Virus record (IMG/VR): IMGVR_UViG_3300027759_006101
Location: 124,001-188,000 of that record
DNA length: 64,000 nt
Strand: one strand, 5' to 3'
Position numbers and translations under genes: made by a program. Positions 10,655-30,342 of the stretch are shown in pieces; position 1 is the first letter of the stretch, and each line of letters opens with the position of its first letter. Below the pieces are notes generated by a model, which saw only the letters and a program-made list of their open reading frames with translations, searched no databases and had not been told where the DNA came from.

Positions 10655-10679
10655 AATTTCGAGGTATAATATTTTATAA

Positions 10680-10750: not shown

Positions 10751-10757
10751 TTTACCA

Positions 10758-10828: not shown

Positions 10829-11206
10829 CCTTCTCCTTTTCTGTGATATAATAAAGATATGAACGAAACAATTTTAATTTCAATTTTATTTGCTTTAGTG
10901 GCAATAATTTTCGTCTTGATATTTGTCGTAATTTTTCAGATTAAAAAAATCTTGAAGTCTTACAATAATAATTTTGAAACATTGAATAAGAAGACAGCGA
11001 AAATAGTGGAGTAGATATGAATTTTATAACTGTAACTTGGATTAACTGTTCTGTTATTTTTGTATCTGTTATGGCATTTTCTCTTTATTTTAATTTTCGA
11101 TTAAATAGATTGATAAAGATGCTTGACTCTATGATTACAGATCGACCAGAATGATTTTTAATCCCATCGAATTCGATGGGATTATTTTTTTAAGGTAAAA
11201 TAAATT

Positions 11207-11527: not shown

Positions 11528-11554
11528 ATAAAAAGGGGAGCTCTGCTCCCCTTT

Positions 11555-12502: not shown

Positions 12503-12515
12503 AATGTTATTATAC

Positions 12516-12986: not shown

Positions 12987-13146
12987 TGATGAGAACTTTG
13001 AAGAGAAAAGTCTTGAATTGACTTATGCTCAATTACAAGAACTTAATCGTTGGTTAAATATTTATTTAAACACAGGCAGAACGCTTGAATATAAGTTAGA
13101 CAAAAGGACTAAAAAAGTTATTGATGTAAAGCTTGCACAGATGTAA
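12964..13146 (+). CDS. hypothetical protein
   Basis: 60-aa ORF upstream of tRNA-Arg. Confidence 0.5.
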   Translation: MKHTITIIDENFEEKSLELTYAQLQELNRWLNIYLNTGRTLEYKLDKRTKKVIDVKLAQM

Positions 13147-13178
13147 GTTGTGGTATAATTAGAGAGTAAGAGAAATAC

Positions 13179-13250
13179 GGCTCCATAGTTAAATGGATAT
13201 AACACGGACCTTCTAAGTCCATATTTTAAGTTCGATTCTTAATGGAGCTA
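13179..13250 (+). tRNA. tRNA-Arg(TCT)
   Basis: GGCTCCA/TGGAGCT acceptor, GGAC-CTTCTAA-GTCC, TTAAGTTCGATTCTTAA. Confidence 0.88.
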
Positions 13251-13267
13251 CTATTTATACCCCCTAA

Positions 13268-13798
13268 TTATTTAGGGGGTATTTCTATTAATCTACCGTG
13301 AATTTCTCTATGGCAATTAGCACAAACTAAAAGACATTTATCAAGTTCTGACTTTACTTTTTCAAAAGAATACATTTTTGCGTGTCCCAAAGAAAAATCT
13401 TTTATAGAAGGATCTTTGTGATGAAATTCTAATGCACCATTGTATTTATCATAATTGCAAATTTGACAACACCCACCTTTGTAATCTATTGCCTTTTGCT
13501 TTAAATCTCTTTGCCTTTGAATAGATCTGATATTTTCACAAGATTTACAATTTGAAGAATATTGTTTTCGAGCTTCGTCTCTTTTTTTATAAAATTCATC
13601 TTTGTTTTTTTCTAATTTACAAATTGAACATTTTTTTGTTTTGCCTTCTTCAAGAGAATTTACAAGTAGATTTGTAGTATTGTGCGCTCTAAAAGGTGAA
13701 CACTCTAAACAAAATTTTCTATTACATATATTGTGTCTTTTGCCATCAATAACAATAATGTTTGGCAAATCATTATTACATTTTAAACATTTTTTCAT
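13268..13798 (-). CDS. HNH homing endonuclease (paralog of 9405..9938)
   Basis: RKFCLECSPF.HNT...YKGG.C..CNY...ALEFHHKDP...KCLLVCANCHREIH. Confidence 0.8.
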   Translation of the reverse strand: MKKCLKCNNDLPNIIVIDGKRHNICNRKFCLECSPFRAHNTTNLLVNSLEEGKTKKCSICKLEKNKDEFYKKRDEARKQYSSNCKSCENIRSIQRQRDLKQKAIDYKGGCCQICNYDKYNGALEFHHKDPSIKDFSLGHAKMYSFEKVKSELDKCLLVCANCHREIHGRLIEIPPK

Positions 13799-13893: not shown

Positions 13894-14271
13894 ATGTGGT
13901 ATAGGTATTCAATGGTTAGAAGAGTTAGCCTGGTAATATTGTTTGATGATGATAAGGTTTTGCTCGGTAAAAAACCTAGTGGATTTTGGATACCTGGAGG
14001 TCACGCTAACTCTGGCGAATCTTCAAAAGATGCTGCAATAAGAGAACTCAAAGAAGAGACTAATCTTGATTTATCTAATTTAAAATTATTTTATTCTAAG
14101 ATTACTGAAAATAAAATTGTAGATGTTTATGTGTGCAACGAATTTTCTGGAGAATCAAAGGCGGATGATGATTTAGAGGAAGTCCATTGGTTTAGTGTCA
14201 ACGAACTTCCTGAAATGCGATTAGATGGAAATGAATTAATTCAACAAGCTTACAAAGAAATATGTTTGTAA
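13894..14271 (+). CDS. Nudix hydrolase
   Basis: Nudix box PGGHANSGESSKDAAIRELKEETNL. Confidence 0.9.
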   Translation: MWYRYSMVRRVSLVILFDDDKVLLGKKPSGFWIPGGHANSGESSKDAAIRELKEETNLDLSNLKLFYSKITENKIVDVYVCNEFSGESKADDDLEEVHWFSVNELPEMRLDGNELIQQAYKEICL

Positions 14272-15861: not shown

Positions 15862-16947
15862 ATGTGGTATAAATTAGCACAACAATTACAACTTCCTGGG
15901 TTAGATATAGAACAATCCCAGCCAAAAATTAAAGAAAAACCAGAACCAAAAGATAAATCTCCAGAACTTTTAGAAACACAAAAAGAACCTCAAAGTTTAT
16001 TCTTTAGTGATTGGGCTAAAGGTCATTATGTGCCAGAGCAACCTGTCTATCACGGAACAACACACGAATTTGATAGATTCGATATTGACAAAGGTTCAAT
16101 GAGTAATTATTTTGGTCCAGCATTTTATTTTACTAGTGATGAAGAAGATGCTTCAAAAAATTACACTGGTACTGGGCCTGATCAAGAAAGAAACATTGAA
16201 AATCTTCAATATGATTTGCTTGATCAATATGGTGAAGACGAATATTATCTATGGAATTTATATAGCGATGATCCAAGATACAGTAAAGATTTCAATGAAG
16301 ATGGCAAACCATATAACCCAAATTATCTAGCAGAAAAAATTGCCAAAGATACAATTTTAGGACCAAATAAGCCTAGAGTAATTCCTGCTCACGTTAGAAT
16401 GAAAAACCCAATTCATCTGACTAGTTCACAAGATGCAGAACATCCTGAAAAAGTTTTCATTGATGATGTAGAAGGTAGTATGGATTTTTTAGGTAAAAGA
16501 ATCAATCCTTCTGACAACCATAATTTTAGTACAGTTATATCAAAACTTCATAATATTATAGTGGACTATTTGGATTTTGATATTGCTAATGAAATTTGTG
16601 AAGAATTAGTTCAAGAAAATTCTGTTGGGTTTGATGAAGAAATTTCAGCATCTTCAATAATTATGGACTTGATTAAAAAATTAGAGTTTTGGGACCGGGA
16701 TCAAGATACACATTTTAAAGGTGATATTGTCAAAAGATTTGTAAATTCATTAGGATACGATAGCATTGTTATGGATCCTAATGAATTTTTCAGAATGTAC
16801 TCTCAAAAAAGACCAATCAAGCATTTCATCACTTGGAATCCTGAAAACATTAAACACGCCAGAGAAAATATAGAGTTTGACCCAGGGAATCCAGTTATCA
16901 CTGCAATGAGTGGTAAAATTAATTTATGGAAGAATTCTTTGCTGTAG
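15862..16947 (+). CDS. ADP-ribosyltransferase-like protein (ART-PolyVal-like)
   Basis: VYHGT..FDRFD..FGPAFYFT..A..Y, MKNP, GYDSIV and C-terminal PENIK..FDPGNP. Confidence 0.65.
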   Translation: MWYKLAQQLQLPGLDIEQSQPKIKEKPEPKDKSPELLETQKEPQSLFFSDWAKGHYVPEQPVYHGTTHEFDRFDIDKGSMSNYFGPAFYFTSDEEDASKNYTGTGPDQERNIENLQYDLLDQYGEDEYYLWNLYSDDPRYSKDFNEDGKPYNPNYLAEKIAKDTILGPNKPRVIPAHVRMKNPIHLTSSQDAEHPEKVFIDDVEGSMDFLGKRINPSDNHNFSTVISKLHNIIVDYLDFDIANEICEELVQENSVGFDEEISASSIIMDLIKKLEFWDRDQDTHFKGDIVKRFVNSLGYDSIVMDPNEFFRMYSQKRPIKHFITWNPENIKHARENIEFDPGNPVITAMSGKINLWKNSLL

Positions 16948-17334: not shown

Positions 17335-17688
17335 ATGAAAAATCATTTGAAATTATTCAAACTTTCACAAAGGCTTGATAAAAATAATTTATATTCACTA
17401 GCTGACAAAATTGATAGATTGGCGCAAAACCAAACTAAAAATTTTGAGAATAAACAGCAAGCTACAGATTATATAAAGAATTTAGGTATGCCAAGCTTTT
17501 CTCAAAATATGGATAAAGCTGCTGATGAAGGCGTTACAATTAATGGTATTTCTATCAAGAACGATCCAGAAATGCAGAAATTATACAAAGATAGTTTATC
17601 ATCAGGAGGCGCAGTTGCAATGCCAGCAATGGCACCAATGCCTATGCCTATGCCAGCACCAATGCCTTCAGTTCCGCCCGTAGTTTAA
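17335..17688 (+). CDS. leader-family protein (divergent) with Met/Pro-rich tail
   Basis: LSQRLDKNNLYSLADKIDRLAQ resembles the shared leader; AMPAMAPMPMPMP tail. Confidence 0.6.
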   Translation: MKNHLKLFKLSQRLDKNNLYSLADKIDRLAQNQTKNFENKQQATDYIKNLGMPSFSQNMDKAADEGVTINGISIKNDPEMQKLYKDSLSSGGAVAMPAMAPMPMPMPAPMPSVPPVV

Positions 17689-17764
17689 TTCGCATCCCAA
17701 ACCAAAAAAAACAGGGGCTACTTTTTCAAAGCCCCTGTTTTTTTTGGTTATTGGTCTGCTTTAA

Positions 17765-18073
17765 TTACTTCGATAGAGGATCGTTTCGACGGCCACCTTC
17801 ACGACGATCATTAGCTGGAAGAGTTGTCTTTGTTACAAGCTTTAACCCGTCAACACTAAATTGATAAAGAGTGTTGCCAGAAAGAACATAAACAAAATTA
17901 CCAGATGCAGCAACAGAAGCAGCACCACCACCTGCTCTCATCCCAACACCCTGACCAAGAGGGAATGGAGTTTGACCTGGGCGTGGAGCTTCTTGAATTC
18001 CACCTGGAACCTGTGCAAATGCTAGCCCGAAAACAGCCAATGAAGCTGCAAGAGAAACCAAAATTTTATTCAT
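17765..18073 (-). CDS. small secreted protein
   Basis: Signal peptide ending AFA-Q; beta-strand motif FVYVLSGNTLYQF. Confidence 0.65.
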   Translation of the reverse strand: MNKILVSLAASLAVFGLAFAQVPGGIQEAPRPGQTPFPLGQGVGMRAGGGAASVAASGNFVYVLSGNTLYQFSVDGLKLVTKTTLPANDRREGGRRNDPLSK

Positions 18074-18189
18074 AATTTTTACCTCTGTTCAATAGACGAA
18101 CAATGTTATTATATGTTCAATAAATGAGTAAAAGATTAAGATAGATCTATAACAAAAAAAAGATCTACTTTCGTAGATCTTTTTTAGAA

Positions 18190-19086
18190 TTATCTTACTT
18201 GAAATCCGTTTTGATCAAGTACTGGAAGATTGCCAGCAGTATATACTTGTTTACCCCAGAGGAAATTATTTGGATTTACTGTGGTTTCAAATCTCATAAA
18301 CTTTGAGTGGCCATCTGCAAAAGTATAATTTGCGCCACCTGTATGTCTGTCAGCTTGAATGTATGCAATTTGTAAAGCACCACCAGCATATCCAGATGAT
18401 TTGCAAGTAGCCCAGGCACTTGCAGCCAAAGATGGAGTGACTGCATAAACTGCTGACAGACTTGGCGCAAACTGTGATAAATCTTCACCCTTCCAAGTTC
18501 CGCCACTCACACTAGTCATAAATGCATTAGTACTTCTGTGGCTCTTGTTTACATAACCACCAGAAGAAGTACCAGCATTAGAAGTGTCATTAATACAAGC
18601 TAATGTATTTGTCATCTCTGCTACTACAATTGTATCTGCTGCAAACTCAATAGCTGAAACAGAAGCAACATTAGCAGGATCAATGCTTCTACGCTTTCTT
18701 GGTAATACGGAAGCATTAGCAACATAAGAAATTCTTGGTGCTTGTAAATCTAAACCTGGGTTAGTAGGAACAATTCCCTTATTTGGATCTGATGGACAAA
18801 CAAATACTGACCAATTCTTTACGTATGGATTAATAAGTCCTGACCATTGATTATATCCATTAGTACCGTTGGAATCATTTGTATACCAGTATGCTTGTGG
18901 ATAAGTTTCATCATAGTCTTGAGCATACATAGTAATACCAAGTCCCATTTGCTTGGTGTTTGAAAGGCAGGATGCAGAACGAGCCTTTTCACGAGCTTGG
19001 GCAAAAACAGGGAAGAGAATTGCAGCCAAAATAGCGATGATTGCAATGACAACGAGTAATTCAATAAGAGTAAACGCTTTTTTCAT
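18190..19086 (-). CDS. prepilin-type N-terminal cleavage/methylation protein with H-X9-DG C-terminus (DUF1559)
   Basis: [39 protein letters not shown]; C-terminal [14 protein letters not shown]. Confidence 0.92.
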
Positions 19087-19208
19087 ATTAGTTTCCTTTT
19101 AGAAATCTTGTTATTATTATTCCGCTTAATAAAAAGACGTATATTAAGGTTTTAGACAAAATTCTTAACATAAAGGAACAGTCTTCTTTTATTCCCTATA
19201 ATAAAAAT

Positions 19209-19694
19209 ATGAATTACAAAATCAAACTCAAACAAAAAAAATATTTGTTCTTAGATATTGATGGAGTATTGAATTCATTTGATGATTATAATATGACAGG
19301 TAATGAATTCATAAAAAACTTAAAGAATATTTCATTTATTACTAGCAAAAAACAAATGTCTATATTGAATAACATAGTAGAAGAATATAATCCCACAATA
19401 ATATTATCATCATACTGGAGAACAAGATATTCTTTAGAAGAATTGAATAATATATTTAGGGAAAATGGTTTTGTGGGCAAGATATCTGGAATTACTAGCA
19501 AAGAGGGCGAAGAACACAAAGATAGGTGGAATCAAATCAAACTATATATAGATAAAAATAAAGTTAAAGATTATATTATATTAGATGATGAAGAAATAAC
19601 CAGAACAGAGAGAAAAATAAATAACTTTGTAAAAACAAATTCTTATGAAGGTTTGACAGAAAAACATTTAAAAGATATAGGAAAAATCTGGTAG
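19209..19694 (+). CDS. HAD-superfamily protein (HAD_SAK_2-like)
   Basis: FLDIDGVLN, ILSSYWR, YIILDDE and GLT motifs. Confidence 0.8.
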   Translation: MNYKIKLKQKKYLFLDIDGVLNSFDDYNMTGNEFIKNLKNISFITSKKQMSILNNIVEEYNPTIILSSYWRTRYSLEELNNIFRENGFVGKISGITSKEGEEHKDRWNQIKLYIDKNKVKDYIILDDEEITRTERKINNFVKTNSYEGLTEKHLKDIGKIW

Positions 19695-19700
19695 GACAAT

Positions 19701-21011
19701 ATGGCAAAATTTATTCGTGCAAGTAAAAAATTTATCAAGATATCTCAGAGTGAAGAAAAATATTATCATGGCACAACTACTGGTGAAAATGATTCAATTC
19801 TTAAAAGTATTATATCTTCAGGCATAGACCCAAAAATTGCACAAGGATTTGGGCAAGGAGCTGGGTTTTATGTTTTCAATAGCATAAATCAAGCTAAAAG
19901 GCAAGCTATGTCACTTAATAGTTTCTTTAGTGGCAGTGAAGTAACATTTGAATATGTGGGAAACCCAGATACTATACCAGGTGGATATCCAATGGTGGTT
20001 TCACTTCCAGTTGATTTAAAATCAGAAACATTTGATTTAGATTATGAGTCATTGCCACGATTTGGATTTTTTATAATAAGAGAAATGTACGACTTGATAA
20101 AAACTTTGCCGCAAGATGCTTTTGCTGAATTGGATCTTTTGGGAAATAGGCCCTCCGCAATACCGGAGCACACTACTATAGATTCTTCTTTATTAGGCGA
20201 TGGTGAAATAATAAGATTGAGGTCAAAACCAAAACCTATTCAAAAACAAAAACGCACACGTAAACAAAAAATAGCATTTTATGTCAAAGACACGCTAAAA
20301 GAATATGAGACTGGAGATGTCGGAACTGGTTATACTTATCATAAAATTTTAGAAGTTCTTAAAAAATATTTTCCAGAGGAATTCAAGAAAGCAGAAGAAA
20401 AAGTTTTTGAAATTTTAAAACCTCTTGAAAATTATGATTATAAATCAGACCATCCCGATGTGGATTGGAAATATGGGACTCAACCTGTAGCTTTTAAATA
20501 TAACGGAAAATACAATATTCATATCGACCCAGCTTTAGACATTATGGTTTACTTTAACAATAATTGGATAAGTGGTCAAGAATATATGCAGCAAAAGGAT
20601 TCTACTAACAATACTGAAAATAGCACATCAGATTCTCAGAACACAAAGACATCAAGGAATAAAAATATGGCAAAATTTATCAAGACAGCATTATTAGAAG
20701 TAAGAGAAAGAACTGAACAGCAAGAAGTTCAATTAGAAGAAGTAAGAACTGGTGAAACATATACTTCTCTTTATGACGCATTACAGAAACAACATAAAAC
20801 TGTAGATGCTCAGACACTTTGTGAACTCTTTACTCCTCTCCATAAAAATACAAACTACAATTCATTAGAAGAAGCTTTAGGTAATAAGGCGGGTTTGTAT
20901 GGTAGAAAAAACGAAGAATTAGCAGAAAAATCATTCTCAGAAATATTAGAAGAAATTGAAAAAGGTTTCCCAGAAGAAATTCTTGAGTTACAATTAAGAA
21001 ATAAGAAATAA
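19701..21011 (+). CDS. ADP-ribosyltransferase-like protein, apparent fusion of two ORFs
   Basis: YYHGTT...GFGQGAGFYV; internal second MAKFIK start near 20667. Confidence 0.5.
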   Translation: MAKFIRASKKFIKISQSEEKYYHGTTTGENDSILKSIISSGIDPKIAQGFGQGAGFYVFNSINQAKRQAMSLNSFFSGSEVTFEYVGNPDTIPGGYPMVVSLPVDLKSETFDLDYESLPRFGFFIIREMYDLIKTLPQDAFAELDLLGNRPSAIPEHTTIDSSLLGDGEIIRLRSKPKPIQKQKRTRKQKIAFYVKDTLKEYETGDVGTGYTYHKILEVLKKYFPEEFKKAEEKVFEILKPLENYDYKSDHPDVDWKYGTQPVAFKYNGKYNIHIDPALDIMVYFNNNWISGQEYMQQKDSTNNTENSTSDSQNTKTSRNKNMAKFIKTALLEVRERTEQQEVQLEEVRTGETYTSLYDALQKQHKTVDAQTLCELFTPLHKNTNYNSLEEALGNKAGLYGRKNEELAEKSFSEILEEIEKGFPEEILELQLRNKK

Positions 21012-21218
21012 TTGGATTTATAGCTAATAGACAAAACTATTAGCTATAATAAATTTAACAGGTGTAATAAGATGAAAAATAAACTTTCAAAAGAACAACT
21101 TGATCTTTTAAATAAATTTAAAAACACAAAAGATAATAAAAGCGCTGCAAACTTAAATGAAAAAACTGAATCAAAAATTAATTCAGTTTCTCATAGACCA
21201 AACTTAAGAAGAAGCGGA

Positions 21219-21482
21219 TCAAGGGGTAAGTGACGGACTCCAATCTGGGCCTGCCAATACTTCCAAGAATTCTTCATAAGTGTAATACTGAGTTTTAGTA
21301 GTTAATGATTCAACACAGTTAGGTACAACTTGCCCCTGCCACTTTACAAATGTCTTTAATCCATCAACACTTAAACGCAAAGTGTCAGCAGATGTTTCAA
21401 GTACTTGTGTAAAATCAATCAAGGGTATTTCTGTAACGTGAAAAATAACAAATGTTCTGTCCATATTTTTATTATAAAACAA
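21219..21482 (-). CDS. conserved small phage protein
   Basis: IDFTQVLETSADTLRLSVDG.KTFVKW is typical of phage hypotheticals. Confidence 0.65.
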   Translation of the reverse strand: MFYNKNMDRTFVIFHVTEIPLIDFTQVLETSADTLRLSVDGLKTFVKWQGQVVPNCVESLTTKTQYYTYEEFLEVLAGPDWSPSLTP

Positions 21483-21535
21483 AAGGTAGGGTTAGTTCCT
21501 TCTTTGAATAAAAAAGAATGTTCGGGGACCAAATT

Positions 21536-22588
21536 ATGCATAAAAAAATAGTACTTAATAAATTGCAGAAAATTGCAAACTTATTTGATCAATGTCAACA
21601 TCACAATCAAGCAGACCAAATAACTCAAATAATGCATAAAATAGCGCAAATTGGTAGCGCTGGAATTTACAAGCCAAAAGGAAGCTCATTCCTAAGCTCA
21701 CAACCTGACTTGGCAATTATTGAAAGCAAAAATAATATTCCAAATGATTTATTATATTACGCCGCATCAGTAACACAAAGAACTAAAACCCCAAAATATG
21801 ATCAAGAAAATTTTGAAAAAACATTAGCAAAATTAAATTCTATTAAAAATAATCCTAAAGTAAAAGATAATTTTCCAAATATTTCAAGCAGTGTAGATTC
21901 TGCTATTGATTTGTTGAATTCAAAATCAAATCAATCTGGTGAAACTAAAACTAAAAGCACATATATAGAAAGATTACCTAGTTCAAAATTAGGAGACTAT
22001 GCTTCTCCAGCTGATACAACTTTTAAAACTCAAGATACTCCATTTGATGATTTAGGACAATTTTTAGATCCATATCAAAATCCGCTTTTGCAAATGGGCG
22101 GTGGTTTTGGCGATATTGTAGGCAATGATCCAGAAGATAAAGCAAAAGACTTTATAAAAAATAAATTTAATCAAGCAAGCTCAAAATCTAAAAGACAAGC
22201 CTCAATACTAATGATGGCTATAAAATTAAAAGAAGATTTAGAAGATGGAGTCAAAGCTTTATTTAATTATTATGATGAAAGAACTTTGATGAAATTATTA
22301 AAAGAATCAAATATTATAGAACAAAATGGTGATATTACAGCAAGACCATTTGATTATTCTGAACTTATTCAAAAATTATCACAGTTAGAACCAACTTCTC
22401 CGCCAGATATGCAAACAACTTCTGGAAATAATAGTTATGGCAGTCTGGAAGAAGTCAAACAAAATTTATTATCTACAGTAGAAACTATCGATAAATTTCA
22501 AGTGTCTATATCACACGCACACGATGTTCAAAGAGAACAACAAAGAGAATTAAATGATTTACAGGGTGATACTATTCCCGACGAATGA
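21536..22588 (+). CDS. leader-family protein
   Basis: MHKKIVLNKLQKIANLFD...ADQITQIMHKIAQ leader plus unique cargo. Confidence 0.75.
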   Translation: MHKKIVLNKLQKIANLFDQCQHHNQADQITQIMHKIAQIGSAGIYKPKGSSFLSSQPDLAIIESKNNIPNDLLYYAASVTQRTKTPKYDQENFEKTLAKLNSIKNNPKVKDNFPNISSSVDSAIDLLNSKSNQSGETKTKSTYIERLPSSKLGDYASPADTTFKTQDTPFDDLGQFLDPYQNPLLQMGGGFGDIVGNDPEDKAKDFIKNKFNQASSKSKRQASILMMAIKLKEDLEDGVKALFNYYDERTLMKLLKESNIIEQNGDITARPFDYSELIQKLSQLEPTSPPDMQTTSGNNSYGSLEEVKQNLLSTVETIDKFQVSISHAHDVQREQQRELNDLQGDTIPDE

Positions 22589-22801
22589 AACAAATCTACA
22601 ACAACTTATTACTAAGAAAATAAATAAACTGTAAAGAGCTATAGCAATCCTATAGCTCTTTCTTTTTTCCCAATTATATTTGTGTAAATAATATCCACTT
22701 GTCCACATCAACATAGCATACAAAAACCACTGGATTATAGTCTCACTATCAAAAGCCCAAAAAAAATAAAAACATAGTTGAATAAAAAATACAATTCTCA
22801 C
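22559..22801 (-). CDS. small membrane protein
   Basis: Three hydrophobic stretches. Confidence 0.45.
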   Translation of the reverse strand: MRIVFFIQLCFYFFWAFDSETIIQWFLYAMLMWTSGYYLHKYNWEKRKSYRIAIALYSLFIFLVISCCRFVSFVGNSITL

Positions 22802-22875
22802 AAGCTTATTATAAAAGGATAATTATCGATATATTTGTAAAAATAAATTAATCACCTTTGATAAGGAAAAAAAAT

Positions 22876-23784
22876 ATGAACAATAAACAAATTGTAGCTT
22901 CACTAAATCAAATTGCTAATGAACTTGATAGCAATGGACTTTATCAAGAAGCTAATGTTGTTACCAATGTTATGGTAAAAATTAGTCAATCTGACTTACA
23001 ATATTCTGGTTCTTCGAAGTATAAGCCGTATGCTAATTTAAGTCCTCAAAGTGTTAATGTCGGCAACGCTGCAGGAAGCACTGCGGGTTCATCAACGACT
23101 GATGAACAAACTTTCAATCAGGCTATTGAACATATAAAAACGCTTTTAAATATGGGCGAAAAAGAAGGAGCAAAAAGTATATTTTTCGATACTCTTGAAA
23201 AACTTACAGAACCTGCTCAACGTGAAAAGTTTAGAAATACGTACTATGAATTAACAGCTCCTTCAGCTTCTCCAAATGCACCAGTCACTAAGCCAAATGC
23301 ACCATCTACTCCAATTGGTACACCTAAGCCATCAGTGCCAGGTAAACCATCCCAGCCAAGTTCCAAACCTGGTATGCCATCCAACCCTGGTAGCTCAAAG
23401 CCTTCAGCACCAAAAAGCGCAGATGGGTTAGACAGATGGGTAAATAAAGCTGAAAATATTTATTCAGCTTGGGTAACAAAAGGGGCAAAGCCAGGTTCAT
23501 CAGCATTTGGATTGATCAAAGATGTTGTAGACTATATGCAAAATGTTAAATCAAGATTGCCATCATCTTTGCATAGCTCTGCAAATGCAAAAATAATCAA
23601 AGTACAAAAAATGATGCAAGATATATTTGATGGAATGCCAGACCCAACTAAGACTGTTGGAGTAATGCCTTATTATGGTGTAAGTGGAGTTAAGGGCAAA
23701 AGTGTTAATCCTTTTGCAGAGGGCGATCGTCTAGAAGGTAAAAAGCTAGATTATCAAGCCGACTACGAAAGTAAAAGATACTAA
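22876..23784 (+). CDS. leader-family protein with Pro/Ser-rich linker
   Basis: MNNKQIVASLNQIANELDSNGLYQEANVVTNVMVKISQ leader. Confidence 0.8.
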   Translation: MNNKQIVASLNQIANELDSNGLYQEANVVTNVMVKISQSDLQYSGSSKYKPYANLSPQSVNVGNAAGSTAGSSTTDEQTFNQAIEHIKTLLNMGEKEGAKSIFFDTLEKLTEPAQREKFRNTYYELTAPSASPNAPVTKPNAPSTPIGTPKPSVPGKPSQPSSKPGMPSNPGSSKPSAPKSADGLDRWVNKAENIYSAWVTKGAKPGSSAFGLIKDVVDYMQNVKSRLPSSLHSSANAKIIKVQKMMQDIFDGMPDPTKTVGVMPYYGVSGVKGKSVNPFAEGDRLEGKKLDYQADYESKRY

Positions 23785-23817
23785 TAAAAAAAGAGGAGCA
23801 AAGCTCCTCTTTTTTTA
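23785..23817. terminator. bidirectional rho-independent terminator (inverse near-copy at ~27653-27681)
   Basis: AAAAAAGAGGAGC-AAA-GCTCCTCTTTTTT between convergent genes. Confidence 0.8.
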
Positions 23818-23829
23818 TTTAAAATCAAA

Positions 23830-24243
23830 TTATAATAAAATTAATTTTTCAGCTCTAATTGTAAAGTATCTACTTAATAATTTTCCATTTTTAATTGAAC
23901 GTACAACTACAAAATCTTTTTCATCTGATACAAAATCATCACAAACTACGCCAAACTCTTCCTCGCCTTTTCCATCAATCCATTTTACTTTGGTGCCAAC
24001 AGTAAATTTTTTCTCTTCAACTAAACTCCAAACTTTGCTCAACTCTTCTACCTGCTCATCTGTCAATAATCTTAACTCGTTCAATTTATCCAACAAGTTT
24101 GATTGACTAACTTTGTAATTTGTTATCTGAGTGTCCAAATTATCATTAAGTTTTATTAACATTTTTCTATCATTATTTTGCTTCCATATGATAAAAAATA
24201 AAACCAAATTTATTAACACAGACAATACTAAAAAATAAATCAT
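23830..24243 (-). CDS. membrane-anchored coiled-coil protein
   Basis: N-terminal TM, heptads, SH3-like C-terminal part. Confidence 0.6.
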   Translation of the reverse strand: MIYFLVLSVLINLVLFFIIWKQNNDRKMLIKLNDNLDTQITNYKVSQSNLLDKLNELRLLTDEQVEELSKVWSLVEEKKFTVGTKVKWIDGKGEEEFGVVCDDFVSDEKDFVVVRSIKNGKLLSRYFTIRAEKLILL

Positions 24244-24482
24244 TTTTTTGCACCTTTTGATTGCTTGAAATTTTTAGCAAACTTTATCATTTCATTTACT
24301 TTTTGCTTACTATAAATTTCAGAGCCATAATTCTTCATCATTACATCAACTGTTTTAGAAAAATCTTTTGCCTTTGTTGATGAAGAATAAAAACTTTTTG
24401 CATCGCCGTGACAAGTCTTGCAATAATTATTATAGTCAATCTTAGAATCTAATAATATCAAAAAATAAATAATATTAATCAT
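24240..24482 (-). CDS. putative monoheme c-type cytochrome
   Basis: Hydrophobic N-terminus, YCKTCHG heme-binding motif, distal Met in TVDVMMKNYG. Confidence 0.55.
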   Translation of the reverse strand: MINIIYFLILLDSKIDYNNYCKTCHGDAKSFYSSSTKAKDFSKTVDVMMKNYGSEIYSKQKVNEMIKFAKNFKQSKGAKK

Positions 24483-25069
24483 ATTACTTCTCTCAAAACC
24501 TCATATATCAATTCCCAATTTTCTTTTCTTGTAGAATCACTCTTTGCATTGTTGAATATCTCTATAACCTTTCCATCATATTTTGCAGTTATATAAGTAT
24601 TGTTGTCAAATAAGCCATCTAACAAATTAAACTTTGTTTCATCATTACAGATAAAACCAACATAACCAATTACTTCGTATCTTCCAGAACAAATATCCCT
24701 AAATTCTTCATACAAAAATGGTAATTCCCAATTTGGGTCATAAAGATAATATTTGTTGCTGTTTTCGCAGTTATTCAACCATAAACCAGTAGTCCTAATT
24801 TTCTTCTGATCAGATAATAAATTTTTCCAAGCTTTCTTGCAAAAATTAAATGTCCTAGTATGACCCTCACAACTAGGTAATGTTTTAAAACCATTTTTAT
24901 TTAAGAAATTCACAATCTTGCTTATTGCCGGATCTAATGTTTCATCGAGTTCAGTAAAATTATAGTCAGAAATTACTCTTTCTTTATAATAGTACCAGTA
25001 ATTATGATCTTCACTGTAAAACCAATCATAATTTTTCAATTTATCAACAGTAATAGGATTTATTCTCAT
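24479..25069 (-). CDS. conserved hypothetical protein (LNKxGxxTxxSCEGH family)
   Basis: LDPAI..IV.FLNKNGFKTLPSCEGH. Confidence 0.6.
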   Translation of the reverse strand: MRINPITVDKLKNYDWFYSEDHNYWYYYKERVISDYNFTELDETLDPAISKIVNFLNKNGFKTLPSCEGHTRTFNFCKKAWKNLLSDQKKIRTTGLWLNNCENSNKYYLYDPNWELPFLYEEFRDICSGRYEVIGYVGFICNDETKFNLLDGLFDNNTYITAKYDGKVIEIFNNAKSDSTRKENWELIYEVLREVI

Positions 25070-25151
25070 AATATATTTTTACTCATAACAAAACAAGATT
25101 CCTAAAAGGACCTTAAGAGAAATAGATAAAATAATAAATATGGAGTAAATT

Positions 25152-25934
25152 ATGAACAAAAGACAAATAGTAACAGCATTAAGTAATATTGCTAACACTC
25201 TTGACAATAATCGCCTTTATCCAGAAGCTAATATTCTTACCAAAGTAATGAATAAATTAGCACAAGAAGATTCAAAACCAGAATATGATTATACTAAAGA
25301 AAGACTATATAATACTTTATCTGATTTTGGTAAAGAGTATGTAGCAGATAGAAATAGGGAAAATCCTATTACATCTTATAAGGAATTTGATGCTGCTATT
25401 TATCATGCTTTTCAATCACCTAATCCAAGAATAAGTGAAATGATGTTCCTAAGCCCATTTGAACAAAGCCAAAATGTTTTCACACAAATAAATCCAGATG
25501 TCTCAGAACTACTAAGAGGTATGTTTATGATTGACAGAGGGATTGACAATGATAAAACATTCCAAAGCTTCAAAGGTTCTATATATCCTGCACTAAAGAA
25601 AAAAATGCAAGAAAGACCAAGCACTGAAACTCTTGATTTGACCACTGGAATTGTACCTTTTGGAAGAAAAACAACTAATAAAAGTAATGAATATCATAAA
25701 CTTTTGAGAAGAGCAAAATCATTACTCAAAAAAGCTGCTGGTGAATATTGGAATCAATCTGGCGCACAATCTTCTATGGACAATTTACTCCGATACATTA
25801 TAGATGATAGTTATAATTCAGAATATAGAGATGAAGCTTATAGTATCATGGAAGAAGCGCAAAGATTACATGATCAATTAAAATCAGATGAAGCTAATAT
25901 GCCAAAATATACAATAGATGTACCAAAATTTTAA
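25152..25934 (+). CDS. leader-family protein
   Basis: MNKRQIVTALSNIANTLDNNRLYPEANILTKVMNKLAQ. Confidence 0.8.
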   Translation: MNKRQIVTALSNIANTLDNNRLYPEANILTKVMNKLAQEDSKPEYDYTKERLYNTLSDFGKEYVADRNRENPITSYKEFDAAIYHAFQSPNPRISEMMFLSPFEQSQNVFTQINPDVSELLRGMFMIDRGIDNDKTFQSFKGSIYPALKKKMQERPSTETLDLTTGIVPFGRKTTNKSNEYHKLLRRAKSLLKKAAGEYWNQSGAQSSMDNLLRYIIDDSYNSEYRDEAYSIMEEAQRLHDQLKSDEANMPKYTIDVPKF

Positions 25935-25944
25935 GGAAAAAATA

Positions 25945-26415
25945 ATGAATAAAAGACAAATTATAGCGTCCCTCAACAAGATTGCTAATGAACTCGACAC
26001 AGCAAAGCTTTACACAGAAGCAAACACAGTAACCAAAGTTATGTCCAAGATCGCTATGGACGGAAACGATGAATATGGCAGTATGGAAGATATGGGTTAT
26101 TGCCCAGAATGCGAAGAATTCACTCTAATAGACGGAAAATGTGAACAATGCGGTCATGGCGAAGATGAAGATTATCCAAACCGTAATCTTACAAATAGAT
26201 TAGATGAAATTAGCAGTATGATGGATATGCATGGAAATCATCCTGCTGACAAACTTCGTGAAGATTACTCCAAAGATTATAATAACCCAACATTTTCAGA
26301 AATGAAAGATGTGTTCAGAGATTTAGATGAATTAGTTGTAGAAAATATGACGATGAATAGAGAACAAAGAAAAAGATACGAAGAAATTAAAAAGCAAATA
26401 ATGAATGCTTTTTGA
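25945..26415 (+). CDS. leader-family protein, acidic Zn-ribbon cargo
   Basis: Leader followed by YCPECEE..CEQCG. Confidence 0.8.
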   Translation: MNKRQIIASLNKIANELDTAKLYTEANTVTKVMSKIAMDGNDEYGSMEDMGYCPECEEFTLIDGKCEQCGHGEDEDYPNRNLTNRLDEISSMMDMHGNHPADKLREDYSKDYNNPTFSEMKDVFRDLDELVVENMTMNREQRKRYEEIKKQIMNAF

Positions 26416-26479
26416 TAATTTGAACTACTAAAATAAGTGGCAATAACATTTTGTCACTTATTTTTTTAAGGAAAATAAA

Positions 26480-26956
26480 ATGAATAAAAAATACATACTT
26501 ACATCACTATATAAAATAGCTAATACACTTGACAATGATGGTCTCTACAAAGAAGCTAACACAGTAACTAAAATTATGTCCAGATTAGCCATCGATGAAA
26601 ATGATGAATATAATACAGAAGATTATTTTCCATATGGCGATCCAGACGAAGATCCAGACGAATTCTTAAACGAAGACGAAGATGAAAGAGACGATTGCTG
26701 TCCAAAATGTGGTAATTGCGACGAAAGAGAAGGCAGCACAATAGTTATGGAAAGATTTAGCAATGGAGAAATTCATTATTGTTCTAAAGGATCCTGTGAC
26801 TATAATTATTGGAGTGATGCAGAAGAAGGCGTAAAACCTCCAATTTGCCCTATCTGCAAAGGAAGAGACTTCTTATTTGACGATTACTCCAACCCTCTCG
26901 CTCAATTTGAATGCGAATCTTGCTCAACAGTATTTGTTGACGGATCTGAGGCTTAG
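26480..26956 (+). CDS. leader-family protein, acidic double Zn-ribbon cargo
   Basis: Leader, D/E-rich tract, CPKC..C/CPIC..CESC. Confidence 0.8.
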   Translation: MNKKYILTSLYKIANTLDNDGLYKEANTVTKIMSRLAIDENDEYNTEDYFPYGDPDEDPDEFLNEDEDERDDCCPKCGNCDEREGSTIVMERFSNGEIHYCSKGSCDYNYWSDAEEGVKPPICPICKGRDFLFDDYSNPLAQFECESCSTVFVDGSEA

Positions 26957-26958
26957 AA

Positions 26959-27291
26959 ATGAACAAGAAACAAATTGTTGCATCATTGAACAATATTGCT
27001 AACGTTTTAGATAATACAGGATTATATAAAGAAGCTAACACAATAACTGAAATTATGTCCAGGTTAGCTATGGACAAAAACGATGAATACAATACAGAAG
27101 ATTATGGTTATTGTCCTGATTGCGGCGATTGGATTGGAGATTATGATTATTGCATAGAATGCGATTGGAACGTTGAAAAAGATGACGATGGACCAGATTT
27201 TGGTGATATAGATTTTTATGATTTTATAGACGAAGATTTTGGTGAAGAAGAAACGCCAACAAAATATACACCTGAAAAACCTGGAAAATAA
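26959..27291 (+). CDS. leader-family protein, acidic Zn-ribbon cargo
   Basis: Leader, YCPDCG..CIEC, D/E-rich tail. Confidence 0.8.
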   Translation: MNKKQIVASLNNIANVLDNTGLYKEANTITEIMSRLAMDKNDEYNTEDYGYCPDCGDWIGDYDYCIECDWNVEKDDDGPDFGDIDFYDFIDEDFGEEETPTKYTPEKPGK

Positions 27292-27293
27292 AA

Positions 27294-27650
27294 ATGAATA
27301 AAAGACAAATTATCGCATCCTTAAATGAAATTGCTAACCAATTAGATATTTCGAATTTGCACTCTGAAGCTAATACTATAACCAAAGTTATGGTAAAATT
27401 AGCCGAAGAGGAAAAAATGAAAACCAAACACTCAGAAGAAGAACTCCAAGAAGCAATGTCCGAACAAGGCATTGAAAAAGCATTCGAAACTTATAAAGAA
27501 AAAGGTGGAAGCGCAAGCAAAGAATCATACTCATCACAATGGAAATCACTCATAGGAAGAATGATTGATGGATTCACAAACAATATGGGCGTTTCAATTG
27601 CTGAAGAAAAATATAAAAGAAAAAATCCATTCTGGGATCCAAGAGACTAA
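27294..27650 (+). CDS. leader-family protein
   Basis: MNKRQIIASLNEIANQLDISNLHSEANTITKVMVKLAE. Confidence 0.8.
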   Translation: MNKRQIIASLNEIANQLDISNLHSEANTITKVMVKLAEEEKMKTKHSEEELQEAMSEQGIEKAFETYKEKGGSASKESYSSQWKSLIGRMIDGFTNNMGVSIAEEKYKRKNPFWDPRD

Positions 27651-27679: not shown

Positions 27680-28708
27680 TTATCCCAATTTTTTCCTAGT
27701 TTGATCACTAGCTACCTTTATGTGAGCAAGCCAATCTAACATATGACCTAAAGCTACAGATGCTTTTAAACAATTCATTTGCAAAGTTCCTGAATTACTC
27801 ATCAAATGGTTAAAACTATCATAAAATGTTTTACTTATTCTTCTGCCACGTAATACACCAGAAACATCGTGGGGATCTTCATATACTAAATCAACTAACT
27901 CAACAATATCTTGAGGCTTTATACGCTCTCTATAATACTTAAGAGCATTATCCCTGATTTGTTCATGAGTTAAATCTTCATTCTTTCTCATCAATTCAAT
28001 TACATATTTATGTAAATCTCTAATCTTAGGATTCTTTTCAAATAAGAATTCTAAAGATGGATTTATAACTCTTTTCTTAATAACTTTCAACCCAGACTTA
28101 TCTTCTTCGTCTCCAGATTCCTCAAATAAATACTTGGCAATCGGCGCACCATAAAAATATGCCATAAAAGTCCACTTATTATCTATATCTAAACCTGCAA
28201 ACTCTTTCAATCCCTTTGCTAGAGTATTGAAAATCATTACAGAATTTGCAATAAAACCATACAACCCATCAATTTTTCTAATACCACTAATAAACTCTTC
28301 AACACGCTCACGAGGATCTTCTATAACCTTTACTTTATTGCACAAACTTATAAAATTTTTAGTGTCCTCAATTACCCAATTAGCACTAGTAAAACGCAAT
28401 AAAATAAAATTAATCCACTTCAACGTATGACCCTGCTCAATTGTTCCCAAAATACCCTCAAGAGCAGGTACAACTTCCCCAATAATTAATAACAACTTTT
28501 CAGCATAATCTACTATAAATGGAGAATCAGGATCTAAACCACCAAATTGCAAAACATTATCAATCTCATCTCTATCTTCGTGAAATTTTGTAACCGATTT
28601 ATGAAGAGGGCGATCAGTGAGAGGTTTTGAATCAACGCCCTCCACAGATGTTTCTACCGGACTAAAACCTTTCAAATTAGATAAATCAATAGCTTCTCTA
28701 TACCACAT
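27680..28708 (-). CDS. hypothetical protein (MWY N-terminus)
   Basis: 342-aa ORF; TATATATGT directly before the ATG. Confidence 0.7.
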   Translation of the reverse strand: MWYREAIDLSNLKGFSPVETSVEGVDSKPLTDRPLHKSVTKFHEDRDEIDNVLQFGGLDPDSPFIVDYAEKLLLIIGEVVPALEGILGTIEQGHTLKWINFILLRFTSANWVIEDTKNFISLCNKVKVIEDPRERVEEFISGIRKIDGLYGFIANSVMIFNTLAKGLKEFAGLDIDNKWTFMAYFYGAPIAKYLFEESGDEEDKSGLKVIKKRVINPSLEFLFEKNPKIRDLHKYVIELMRKNEDLTHEQIRDNALKYYRERIKPQDIVELVDLVYEDPHDVSGVLRGRRISKTFYDSFNHLMSNSGTLQMNCLKASVALGHMLDWLAHIKVASDQTRKKLG

Positions 28709-29664: not shown

Positions 29665-29979
29665 TTAGTTACAATGATTAGTAAAGAGTTCATAGGATCC
29701 ACCTGTTTGCTTGTTCGCTATATCAATCATTTCATCCCAACTGGCTGTATATCCTATCATTCCCGACAACGCTGTAGACACTGTTTCATAACTACGTCCG
29801 ATCTTTTCACTTACAAAAACAGCTAACCGTCCATTATTAGTTGTTTTAGCATGTTTACCAGTTAATGGATTAACATATAACCATACGTCAGAGATCATAT
29901 TATCATAATCTACAGGGTACAATTCTGGATCTGCATTGTTCATATATCTTTTATAAAATATCTTGACATGTATATACAA
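29665..29979 (-). CDS. hypothetical protein (likely start ~29943)
   Basis: ORF divergent from 29997. Confidence 0.5.
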   Translation of the reverse strand: MYIHVKIFYKRYMNNADPELYPVDYDNMISDVWLYVNPLTGKHAKTTNNGRLAVFVSEKIGRSYETVSTALSGMIGYTASWDEMIDIANKQTGGSYELFTNHCN

Positions 29980-29991
29980 TATGATATAATA
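29963..29991 (+). promoter_or_regulatory. sigma70-type promoter, leaderless transcript
   Basis: TTGACA-N17-TATAAT with a TG extension, about 6 nt before ATG 29997; no SD. Confidence 0.8.
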
Positions 29992-29996
29992 CTTGT

Positions 29997-30197
29997 ATGG
30001 AAAACACTACAATCTCCCAATTCGTAAGCGACAACGTAGAAGGCGATCCAGCATTCAAAGGATACGTTGTCAGTGAGTTGAAGGATCTGGTAAAACAGAA
30101 TCCTACAATGTCACTTTCAGAGTTGCTTCAGGATGCAACGGAATCTGCCCTAGAACAATGGGATACAGACCAATATACAGACTACTACCAAGAGTAG
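29997..30197 (+). CDS. small acidic protein (MENTT start)
   Basis: Own promoter and terminator. Confidence 0.7.
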   Translation: MENTTISQFVSDNVEGDPAFKGYVVSELKDLVKQNPTMSLSELLQDATESALEQWDTDQYTDYYQE

Positions 30198-30342
30198 TCT
30201 GTACACAGCCCTTGACATTTGTCAAGGGCTTTATTATTTATTTTTTTATGCAAAGTGTTTATAGGAATGGTAAATACCATTCCTGAAAAAATTTGTCAAA
30301 TAAATTTTTTTACTTGACAAGATATTGGATATGTGGTAAGAC

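What the first reader, a model, noticed from the sequence alone, without database searches (positions are those of the whole stretch)
17335..27650. Eight proteins share a ~38-aa N-terminal leader fused to unrelated cargo
Seen: consensus MNKxQIxxSLNxIANxLDxxxLYxEANxxTKxMxKLA at 21536, 22876, 25152, 25945, 26480, 26959 and 27294, with a divergent copy at 17335. Similarity largely stops after the leader. Cargos range from ~70 to ~310 aa (helical, Pro/Ser-rich, acidic Zn ribbons). Known: T4 internal proteins use a short capsid-targeting sequence that is removed proteolytically. Inference: a portable packaging/ejection tag defining a modular virion effector-delivery system that gains cargo by leader duplication.
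Basis: partly seen in the sequence, partly recalled or inferred. Interest (0 to 1): 0.8.

Follow-up and report, generated by a model that had tools for sequence, protein, structure and literature searches.

The report
Portable helical-hairpin tag on phage proteins
A huge uncultivated freshwater phage puts the same 38-residue helix-turn-helix tag, which looks like one TPR repeat, on many unrelated small proteins. The tag behaves as a swappable address or docking label, but where it sends its cargo, the virus particle or somewhere else, is not yet shown.

Summary
Seven + strand genes (starts 21536, 22876, 25152, 25945, 26480, 26959, 27294) share a 37-38 aa N-terminal module (HMM E 1e-21 to 1e-24). 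The gene at 17335 is a divergent member (E about 1e-3).

The window is part of a 358-kb IMG/VR contig from freshwater. The module is on at least 687 protein clusters in public data. It appeared in none of the deposited phage records searched with two module-bearing proteins, and in none of 185,579 reference genomes.

It is a basic, amphipathic helix-turn-helix that matches a single TPR_10-type repeat (hhalign 97%). It is constrained as protein, not as DNA.

It is truly portable:
- 39 cargo families carry it in 29 related loci.
- One cargo occurs both with and without it.
- One enzyme family carries either it or a second, 6-residue tag (MWY[KR]x[AS]) at the same junction.
- Homology blocks between phages end inside leaders.
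- About 1000-aa neighbour proteins end in a related hairpin.

Best reading: a terminal docking or address module. Virion loading of the T4 capsid-targeting kind is the most likely destination but is untested. No invariant protease site follows the tag, the cargos lean acidic, and the neighbourhood is not structural.

Verdict: a new variant of a known kind, interest 0.65.

The parts
21536..22588 (+). Leader protein, 350 aa. Leader at 21536-21649 is the most divergent of the seven (MHKKIVLNKLQKIANLFDQ...). The C-terminal half of the cargo is homologous to a 152-aa family that has its own short leader in other phages.
22876..23784 (+). Leader protein, 302 aa. Leader at 22876-22989. Pro/Ser-rich basic cargo (pI 9.3). 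Followed by a hairpin terminator at 23783-23819.
25152..25934 (+). Leader protein, 260 aa. Leader at 25152-25265. First gene of a five-gene same-strand array. In L027 its cargo sits behind a g26480-type leader.
   Evidence: contigs from RNA libraries lie on it
25945..26415 (+). Leader protein, 156 aa. Order of parts: leader hairpin, acidic linker, zinc ribbon (CPEC...CEQC), then a four-helix C-terminal domain.
   Evidence: contigs from RNA libraries lie on it
26480..26956 (+). Leader protein, 158 aa. Very acidic cargo (net charge -27) with 10 Cys in zinc-ribbon-like pairs.
26959..27291 (+). Leader protein, 110 aa. Acidic cargo with a zinc ribbon. Its leader gives the one weak Pfam TPR_10 hit.
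27294..27650 (+). Leader protein, 118 aa. Its 80-aa helical cargo also exists without any leader in L013, L024/L025, L016/L029 and L010/L011.
17335..17688 (+). Divergent member, 117 aa. Subfamily-B hairpin (LSQRLDKNNLYSLADKIDRLA) with a Pro/Met/Ala-rich tail.
15862..16947 (+). Protein with the second N-terminal tag (MWYKLAQ). Its cargo is an ADP-ribosyltransferase of the polyvalent-protein type (ART-PolyVal, E 2.7e-10).
13894..14271 (+). Protein with the second tag (MWYRYS). Its cargo is a Nudix hydrolase (PHROG E 1e-17).
27680..28708 (-). Protein with the second tag (MWYREA), 342 aa, function unknown. Convergent with the end of the array and conserved in L008/L009.

Best explanation
The shared 37-38 residues are a self-contained, basic, amphipathic helix-turn-helix that resembles one TPR_10/TPR_12 repeat. 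The module sits at a protein terminus, joined to its cargo by a flexible and usually acidic linker. It acts as a portable docking or address module: it packs its exposed hydrophobic face against a common partner and so brings many unrelated small accessory proteins to one place.

The partner may be another hairpin, for example the related C-terminal hairpin on the ~1000-aa proteins encoded next to the arrays in sister phages, in a head-to-tail arrangement.

The most likely destination is the assembling head, so that the cargos travel in the virion and enter the next host with the DNA, as T4 internal proteins and Alt do by way of their capsid-targeting sequence.

Shown: the module exists, is under protein-level constraint, is TPR-like, is portable and is terminal. 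Inferred: that it docks. Not tested: that the destination is the virion, or that the tag is cut off.

My confidence is about 0.8 that it is a portable docking or address module and about 0.35-0.4 that the destination is the virion. The figure given for this field is for the whole statement.
For: Family. 687 cluster representatives carry the module, and it is at residues 1-12 in 143 of the 148 strong hits.

Conservation. Both core residues (L10, I13, A14, L17, A26, M33) and surface residues (N2, S9, N15, D18, E25, T30) are 90-98% conserved, and conservation ends abruptly at position 37.

Protein-level constraint. Pairwise identity at codon positions 1/2/3 is 0.68/0.82/0.50. Codon reuse for identical residues is 0.53 against 0.42 expected.

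TPR likeness. hhalign of the leader profile against TPR_10 repeats gives 97% probability and E 7e-11. A TPR profile picks five of the leaders as its only hits in the window.

Structure. AlphaFold predicts helices 3-19 and 23-38, followed by a low-confidence linker. Both helices are amphipathic, and helix B has a hydrophobic arc of about 180 degrees, wider than the hairpin itself needs.

Portability. There are 39 cargo clusters in 29 loci. Leaderless orthologues of the g27294 cargo exist. A zincin-like (HExxH motif) family carries either the hairpin or MWYK at the same junction. Homology blocks end inside leaders.

Other positions. C-terminal and double-ended copies occur, including on all complete ~1000-aa family-18 proteins (hhalign 94.5%).

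Virion lean. T-even internal proteins are diverse defence proteins that share only a capsid-targeting sequence, and Alt, an ADP-ribosyltransferase, is packaged with propeptides at both ends (PMC3012670, PMC9026906). Here the interchangeable MWY tag sits on an ART-PolyVal enzyme, a GH108 lysozyme, a Nudix hydrolase and J-domain proteins. [AGS]-x-E, the site type cut by giant-phage prohead proteases (PMC10052503), is enriched 2.5-fold at the boundary. Contigs from four RNA libraries lie on leader genes and not on the opposite-strand genes between them.
Against: No virion data exist, and no cultured relative was found. No Glu is invariant at the boundary: A-x-E occurs in 55 of 150 leaders, and Asp is as enriched as Glu. 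The cargos lean acidic (57% with pI below 5.5), unlike the basic T4 internal proteins. The island lies among methyltransferases, HNH nucleases, a Nudix hydrolase and ADP-ribosyltransferases, not head genes. A 38-aa folded hairpin that also works at C-termini, and on a protein with a hydrophobic, membrane-helix-like segment (L110 7587-8984), is unlike a 10-aa linear targeting sequence. The candidate partner, family 18, is absent from this 64-kb window. The TPR proteins used in the hhalign test were themselves found with the leader profile, so that test is partly circular. The independent Pfam TPR_10 hit is far below threshold (14.6 against 27.5 bits).
Confidence: 0.42

Rival explanations
1. The hairpin docks its cargo onto a hub that works inside the infected cell and not in the virion. 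The hub could be a phage complex built by hairpin-to-hairpin stacking, such as the ~1000-aa family-18 proteins, or a host machine. The tagged proteins would then be made after infection as host-takeover or anti-defence factors.
For: The island lies among DNA-modification, nuclease, Nudix, ADP-ribosyltransferase and J-domain genes. The cargos are small, acidic, often zinc-ribbon proteins, and one is an FHA domain; these look like inhibitors or adaptors. There is no conserved cleavage site. C-terminal and internal copies fit a general docking domain. Each leader gene or operon is its own unit between terminators, as morons are.
Against: No partner has been identified. Family 18 is seen in only 6 of 29 loci and not in the window. 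The arrangement of tandem genes that share only a terminal tag, in a hypervariable island with homing nucleases, is the one known from T-even internal-protein loci (PMC3012670).
Confidence: 0.3
2. The hairpin has no common partner. It is a self-association module (dimer or four-helix bundle) or a folding and solubility cap that small, partly disordered proteins reuse.
For: Lone helical hairpins with wide hydrophobic faces commonly self-associate (general knowledge). The only structural look-alikes are designed hairpin dimers and mini-binders, at non-significant scores. Natural proteins with two or three copies exist.
Against: Surface polar positions (N2, N15, D18, E25, T30) are 90-98% conserved across hundreds of clusters, more than a generic bundle needs. 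The hairpin can be replaced by a 6-residue MWY tag on the same enzyme, and six residues cannot supply oligomerisation. Cargo orthologues live without it.
Confidence: 0.15
3. This is an ordinary paralogous gene family whose N-termini evolve slowly and whose C-termini evolve fast, with no modular tag.
For: 25945, 26480 and 26959 are true paralogues beyond the leader.
Against: Cargos differ in length (72-312 aa), composition and predicted fold, and one is a recognisable FHA domain. The same cargo occurs with the leader, without it, or with another tag. Cargo modules are themselves shuffled.
Confidence: 0.04
4. The conserved stretch is kept for a nucleic-acid function, such as a shared translational operator, a recombination site or an expression-enhancing start region, and not for the peptide.
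For: The A-rich codons after the ATG (AAT AAA AGA CAA) could favour initiation. Homology blocks between phages do end in leaders.
Against: Third codon positions are only 50% identical, against 82% at second positions. Codon reuse is near the level expected from codon usage. The amino-acid pattern is kept across 687 clusters.
Confidence: 0.03

Closest known systems
T4 capsid-targeting sequence (CTS) on internal proteins IPI-III and Alt
   Same: A short N-terminal sequence is the only thing shared by otherwise unrelated, fast-evolving accessory proteins. The genes lie in variable loci. An ADP-ribosyltransferase is among the tagged proteins, here through the sister MWY tag. Alt has propeptides at both ends, and some proteins here carry the hairpin at both ends (PMC3012670, PMC9026906).
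   Different: The T4 CTS is 10 residues, linear, and ends at an obligatory L/I-x-E site. Here the tag is a 38-residue folded hairpin with no invariant Glu. T4-type internal proteins are basic, whereas these cargos lean acidic. Packaging is shown for T4 and untested here.
Propeptide-bearing ejection and inner-body protein paralogues of giant phages (phiKZ, 201phi2-1, SPN3US)
   Same: Both are large phages with multi-gene families of head-internal proteins whose N-terminal parts are removed after A/S/G-x-E (PMC10052503, PMC9026906). The [AGS]-x-E motif is enriched just after the leader.
   Different: Those propeptides are 20-254 aa and belong to true paralogues, not to a short tag on unrelated cargo. 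No sequence relationship was found to any deposited phage.
TPR_10 / TPR_12 repeats (Pfam PF13374, PF13424)
   Same: The same helix-turn-helix pattern, SLNxhANxLxxxGxYxEA, over 27 columns (hhalign 97%). A TPR profile retrieves the leaders.
   Different: TPRs work as tandem arrays that form a solenoid. Here there is one repeat per protein, at a terminus. The Pfam score is far below threshold. Positions N15, D18, T30 and M33 are leader-specific.
Encapsulin cargo-loading peptides (from general knowledge)
   Same: A short terminal peptide on a flexible linker addresses unrelated cargo to the inside of an HK97-fold shell.
   Different: Those peptides are extended and usually C-terminal, not helical hairpins. 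No shell interaction has been tested here.
Head-to-tail docking domains of modular synthases, and MuF-domain polymorphic toxins / polyvalent proteins of phages (from general knowledge)
   Same: Small helical modules at opposite termini pair proteins, as in docking domains. A conserved head-associated N-terminal part carries variable C-terminal effectors, as in MuF toxins. ART-PolyVal (significant) and LPD domains (weak hits) occur among the tagged cargos here.
   Different: There is no sequence similarity to either. Here each effector is a separate small protein and not a domain of a giant polyprotein.

Membership tests
T4-type capsid-targeting sequence | A short conserved N-terminal sequence shared by otherwise unrelated phage proteins | tested here: met
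   Seven plus one genes in the window. 143 of 148 strong database hits have it at residues 1-12. There are 39 cargo clusters.
T4-type capsid-targeting sequence | The tag ends at an obligatory prohead-protease site (L/I-x-E in T4, A/S/G-x-E in giant phages) | tested here: inconclusive
   A-x-E occurs in 55 of 150 leaders and A-x-D in 39 of 150. [AGS]-x-E is at the boundary in 36% against 14% of interior windows. No residue after position 37 exceeds 39%.
T4-type capsid-targeting sequence | About 10 residues, linear, and required at the N-terminus | tested here: not met
   The module is a 37-38 residue helix-turn-helix. It also occurs at C-termini, at both ends and internally.
T4-type capsid-targeting sequence | Tagged proteins are in the prohead core or virion and are ejected into the host | not testable with these tools
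   No isolate or virion proteome exists, and no relative was found among deposited phages.
T4-type capsid-targeting sequence | Cargo proteins are basic, DNA-associated internal proteins | tested here: not met
   Cargo median pI is 5.2. 57% are below 5.5, against 40% of neighbouring genes. 82% of linkers are net negative.
TPR_10 / TPR_12 repeat | Helix-turn-helix with the family's residue pattern | tested here: met
   hhalign gives 97% probability and E 6.8e-11 over 27 columns. A TPR profile hits five leaders at E 3e-7 to 8e-3.
TPR_10 / TPR_12 repeat | Reaches the curated Pfam score | tested here: not met
   The best hit scores 14.6 bits against a gathering score of 27.5, and only one of the eight proteins hits at all.
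TPR_10 / TPR_12 repeat | Tandem array of three or more repeats forming a solenoid | tested here: not met
   There is one copy per protein. No multi-repeat TPR protein is present in the window.
Polyvalent-protein effector repertoire | Cargo domains belong to families defined from polyvalent proteins | tested here: inconclusive
   ART-PolyVal is significant on MWY-tagged proteins (E 2.7e-10 and 2e-11). LPD26 (0.0018) and LPD23 (0.063) are weak. 53 of 55 hairpin cargos scanned have no significant Pfam family.

The most novel reading that the evidence does not exclude
A clade of huge freshwater phages, probably infecting Armatimonadota, uses a small 'address code' of interchangeable terminal tags: a 38-residue single-TPR hairpin in at least two subfamilies, and a 6-residue MWY[KR]x[AS] tag. 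These tags load dozens of shufflable effector cassettes onto carrier proteins by head-to-tail hairpin docking, for delivery with the genome. This would be a cargo-loading system mechanistically distinct from the T4 capsid-targeting sequence.
Probability: 0.2. Interest if true: 0.85.

Novelty: new variant of a known kind. Interest (0 to 1): 0.65.

Why it matters
How large phages choose which accessory proteins to carry or deploy is known in detail only for T4 and a few phiKZ-like phages. This module is a widespread address or docking label (at least 687 protein clusters) that matches no curated family tested here (Pfam, PHROGs, NCBIfam). It has clear module boundaries, natural gain, loss and swap variants, and a second, interchangeable 6-residue tag. 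Together these give a direct handle on the question. They mark out, by sequence alone, a large set of candidate effectors in uncultivated huge phages. They also offer a minimal peptide whose binding partner can be sought by co-folding, pull-down or virome proteomics. If the destination is the capsid, the tag would be a second, structurally different way of loading phage heads with protein.

Tried and rejected
- Pfam, PHROGs and NCBIfam on the eight proteins gave nothing significant for the leader or the cargos.
- Pfam on 55 database members gave only FHA, in 2 of them.
- blastn and tblastn against 50,697 deposited phage records found no match for the region, a leader protein, a subfamily-B protein or family 18.
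- A pattern scan of 185,579 reference genomes for the leader found no relative, so there is no prophage or host clue from the leader itself. The first attempt failed because the alignment was too loose.
- The word-index protein search with residues 1-40 returned only 8 close copies.
- The ESM Atlas search on the leader and on family 18 returned only unnamed viral clusters.
- AlphaFold without an alignment gave a poor model (pLDDT 46). With 15 sequences it gave pLDDT 62, and Foldseek against BFVD and PDB then found nothing below E 0.3, only trivial hairpin matches.
- A PDB profile search with family 18 found nothing.
- The sigma-70 promoter scan showed no excess of sites (86 against 74 expected) and no shared motif upstream of leader genes, so early or late timing could not be assigned.
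- Gene conversion as the cause of leader identity is rejected, because synonymous sites are scrambled.
- Walking 11 kb upstream of the window found glycosyltransferase-like and unknown genes plus one more weak hairpin protein, but no head genes.


Full report
**What is there.**
Aligned, the seven close copies share MNK(R/K)QIxASLNKIANxLDxxGLYxEANxxTKVMxKLA, with nine invariant positions in 40 columns. A profile of these seven, run on all 1364 six-frame ORFs of the window, recovers exactly the seven at E 5e-24 to 3e-21. The 17335 ORF is the best of the rest at E 0.11. A broader profile lifts 17335 to E 0.0011. A profile of a related C-terminal hairpin makes it the top hit in the window at E 8e-4. 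It is a real but divergent member of a second subfamily (AQKLDxxxxYxxADK). Beyond position 37-38 the window's cargos are unrelated, with two exceptions: 25945 and 26959 share 29 aa, and 26480 and 26959 share 9 aa.

**Where it comes from.**
The window is bases 124,001-188,000 of IMGVR_UViG_3300027759_006101, a 358-kb viral contig. The window has about 33% G+C, nine tRNA genes, rIIA and rIIB, and no DNA or protein relative closer than 24-28% among 50,697 deposited phage records. Many freshwater metagenomes hold the phage. A conserved phage-encoded prepilin-like gene (18190-19086, minus strand) has its best full-length homologues, up to 49% identity, almost only in Armatimonadota genomes. That points to the host phylum.

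**How widespread the module is.**
- A 40-column profile finds 687 representatives of 50%-identity clusters at E <= 1e-3, and 291 at E <= 1e-10.
- In 143 of the 148 strong hits the module starts within the first 12 residues.
- IMG/VR gave 29 loci with 1-9 profile matches each, usually several per locus (some ORFs match more than once). Many lie on contigs of 165-358 kb.
- No relative was found in 185,579 reference bacterial and archaeal genomes.
- Pfam, PHROGs and NCBIfam have no model for it.

**What the module is.**
Conservation across 156 leaders is 90-98% at M1, N2, S9, L10, I13, A14, N15, L17, D18, E25, A26, T30 and M33. It collapses after [AS]37. The constraint acts on the protein. Among the six close copies, pairwise identity is 0.68/0.82/0.50 at codon positions 1/2/3. 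Identical residues reuse the same codon 53% of the time, against 42% expected from codon usage. These are old duplicates under purifying selection, not products of gene conversion.

The multi-stretch database hits turned out to be cellular TPR_10/TPR_12 proteins. Profile-profile comparison of the leader with 27 such repeats gives 97% probability and E 6.8e-11 over 27 columns. A profile of those repeats retrieves five leaders as its only hits in the window. One leader gives a weak independent Pfam TPR_10 hit (E 0.035). The hhalign test is partly circular, because the leader profile found those TPR proteins in the first place.

AlphaFold predicts helices 3-19 and 23-38, then a low-confidence linker (pLDDT 39), then the cargo modules. 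Both helices are strongly amphipathic. Helix B has a hydrophobic arc of about 180 degrees, more than the hairpin needs for itself. The leader is basic (pI 8-10 in six of the eight). The 20 residues after it are net negative in 82% of family members. The leader is therefore one TPR-like hairpin on a flexible acidic tether.

**Evidence that it is portable.**
1. One hundred leader proteins in the 29 loci fall into 39 cargo clusters. Of 55 longer database members, only two carry a significant Pfam domain (FHA).
2. The 80-aa cargo of g27294 occurs with the leader in the window and in L015, L018-L021 and L002. It occurs as a 77-82-aa leaderless gene in L013, L024/L025, L016/L029 and L010/L011, with no leader in any upstream frame.
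3. A 300-aa family with an HExxH motif carries a hairpin in L005. Its 47-58% identical orthologues in L008 and L017 carry only MWYK, joined at the same AAQGII junction.
4. blastn blocks between the window and sister loci are leader-plus-cargo cassettes whose ends fall inside leaders. In L027 the g25152 cargo sits behind a g26480-type leader and upstream region. In L013 the g25945 leader is 93% identical over 158 nt while its cargo diverges.
5. Cargos are themselves modular: the acidic spacer, zinc ribbon and helical C-terminal domain are present or absent in different members.
6. Homing-type HNH nucleases are frequent neighbours. Leader genes form separate units between terminators.

**It is not strictly an N-terminal leader.**
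- Some proteins carry the hairpin at both ends (P0065, P0069, P0016, P0052, L022, L026). Others have two or three copies (P0001, P0020). In more divergent lineages it is internal (P0061, P0130).
- All eight complete members of a ~1000-aa family (family 18, tandem pairs next to the arrays in L002, L004, L007, L015 and L024/L025) end in ...VKSMVKIAQKLDxxxxYKLADKFTNILRK. This matches the leader profile at 94.5% probability and E 8e-8.
- Family 18 has no match in Pfam, PHROGs, PDB sequences or deposited phages. It is not in this window.

**A second tag.**
In the same island, unrelated proteins begin with MWY[KR]x[AS]. There are 22 such genes in 9 families and 13 loci, against 0.05 expected. Tagged cargos include:
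- an ART-PolyVal ADP-ribosyltransferase (window 15862, E 2.7e-10);
- a Nudix hydrolase (window 13894);
- J-domain proteins;
- a GH108 lysozyme with a peptidoglycan-binding domain;
- SprT-like and LPD26 domains, as weak hits.

Because this tag replaces the hairpin on one orthologous family, the two tags probably serve the same end. Both end in [KR]-x-[AS]. I cannot tell whether that means anything.

**How it most likely works.**
The terminal position at either end, the flexible tether, the conserved surface residues, the surplus hydrophobic face, and the ability to be swapped or lost without destroying the cargo all point to a docking or address module that binds a common partner. I put this at about 0.8.

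The most likely destination is the assembling head, at about 0.35-0.4. [quoted passage not shown] In T4 the 10-residue sequence is sufficient for encapsidation, and Alt, an ADP-ribosyltransferase, is packaged with propeptides at both ends (PMC9026906). Giant-phage prohead proteases cut after A-x-E (PMC10052503), and [AGS]-x-E is enriched at the leader boundary (36% against 14%).

Against this reading:
- no Glu is invariant, and Asp is equally enriched;
- the cargos lean acidic, unlike T4's basic internal proteins;
- the neighbours are methyltransferases, nucleases and other non-structural genes;
- a weak subfamily-B copy sits on a protein with a hydrophobic, membrane-helix-like segment 11 kb upstream of the window;
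- there are no virion data.

An intracellular hub (0.3) or plain self-association (0.15) remain open. An ordinary divergent paralogue family and a nucleic-acid-level element are effectively excluded.

**Expression.**
Contigs from four river and lake RNA libraries lie on g25152, g25945 and g27294, and in single libraries on g22876 and the MWY gene. None lie on the opposite-strand genes at 23.8-25.0 kb. This suggests transcription in nature. It is weak evidence: the runs were chosen by these very sequences, contigs carry no strand, and DNA carry-over was not excluded. Two of those contigs join one leader to another (25169 to 26008). That is what a relative with a different cassette order would give, but the flanks are short.

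**Comparison and novelty.**
The system works like a T4 capsid-targeting sequence or a docking domain, but it is not a member of either family. The length, fold, position and cleavage-site features of the T4 sequence are not met or are inconclusive. It has the sequence pattern of a TPR_10 repeat, but it fails that family's score threshold and its defining tandem architecture. I file it as a new variant of a known kind: portable terminal tags on variable phage accessory proteins.

Noticed in passing
window 13894-14271 (+), 15862-16947 (+), 27680-28708 (-); L005, L008, L013, L017, L022-L028: A second, 6-residue N-terminal tag, MWY[KR]x[AS], sits on unrelated proteins (ART-PolyVal, Nudix, J-domain, GH108 lysozyme, 780-aa unknowns). 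There are 22 genes in 9 families against 0.05 expected. On one enzyme family it replaces the hairpin at the same junction.
   Followed up: partly
window 19701-21011 (+): The 436-aa ORF starts with MAKFIR and has a second MAKFIK at residue 324. Its last 113 aa form a separate gene (MAKFIKTALL...) in about 10 sister loci. This is either a gene fusion or a third shared N-terminal motif. The first part has a YHGTT motif like the ADP-ribosyltransferase at 15862 but gives no Pfam hit.
   Followed up: partly
window 18190-19086 (-), 17765-18073 (-): The phage encodes a prepilin-type (N-methylation motif plus DUF1559) protein, conserved in 11 sister loci, next to a small protein with a hydrophobic, signal-peptide-like N-terminus. 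Its best homologues, up to 49% identity over the full length, are almost all in Armatimonadota genomes, which suggests the host phylum.
   Followed up: yes
L002 315-3302 (-), L004 1476-7185 (-), L007 1967-4978 (-), L015 233-6050 (-), L024 1460-4468 (-): Tandem pairs of ~1000-aa proteins of unknown function lie next to the arrays. Every complete member ends in a hairpin related to the leader. They are candidate docking partners or carriers and are absent from this window.
   Followed up: partly
window 29963-30230 (+): A perfect sigma-70 consensus promoter (TTGACA, 16 nt, TG-n-TATAAT) is followed by a 66-codon ORF (29998-30197) and a strong terminator (30207-30230). It looks like an immediate-early unit read by the host polymerase. 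Leader genes have no comparable promoter.
   Followed up: no
window 9405-9938 (+), 13268-13798 (-); about 300-aa HNH genes in 19 of 29 loci: Homing-type HNH endonuclease genes are scattered through and beside the tag island, in line with its cassette turnover.
   Followed up: no
window 9255-13251 (+) and 48658-52198 (-): Nine tRNA genes lie in two clusters (Asn, Glu, Gln, Thr, Arg; Ser, Met, Lys, Leu). All read A/T-rich codons, which suits a 33% G+C phage whose probable hosts may be richer in G+C.
   Followed up: no
window 53230-56756 (-), 44252-45676 (-): Divergent rIIB and rIIA homologues (rIIA 24-28% identical to any deposited phage), plus a second GHKL-ATPase protein (HATPase_c_3).
   Followed up: no
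L003, L005, L010, L011, L013, L015, L017, L024, L025: Leader arrays often lie at the very end of their contigs. This suggests that assemblies break there, because of repeated leaders or strain-level cassette variation.
   Followed up: no
L002, L027: Two short leader-bearing contigs are labelled in IMG/VR as part of a giant-virus MAG (GVMAG-M-3300009181-40). Their genes match the phage loci, so they are probably mis-binned phage fragments.
   Followed up: no
L110 7587-8984 (+), contig about 4-5 kb upstream of the window start: A 465-aa protein has a weak subfamily-B hairpin at its N-terminus (E 6.5e-4), a Pro/Lys-rich repeat and a hydrophobic, membrane-helix-like segment. Hairpin-bearing proteins are therefore not confined to the island in the window.
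   Followed up: partly
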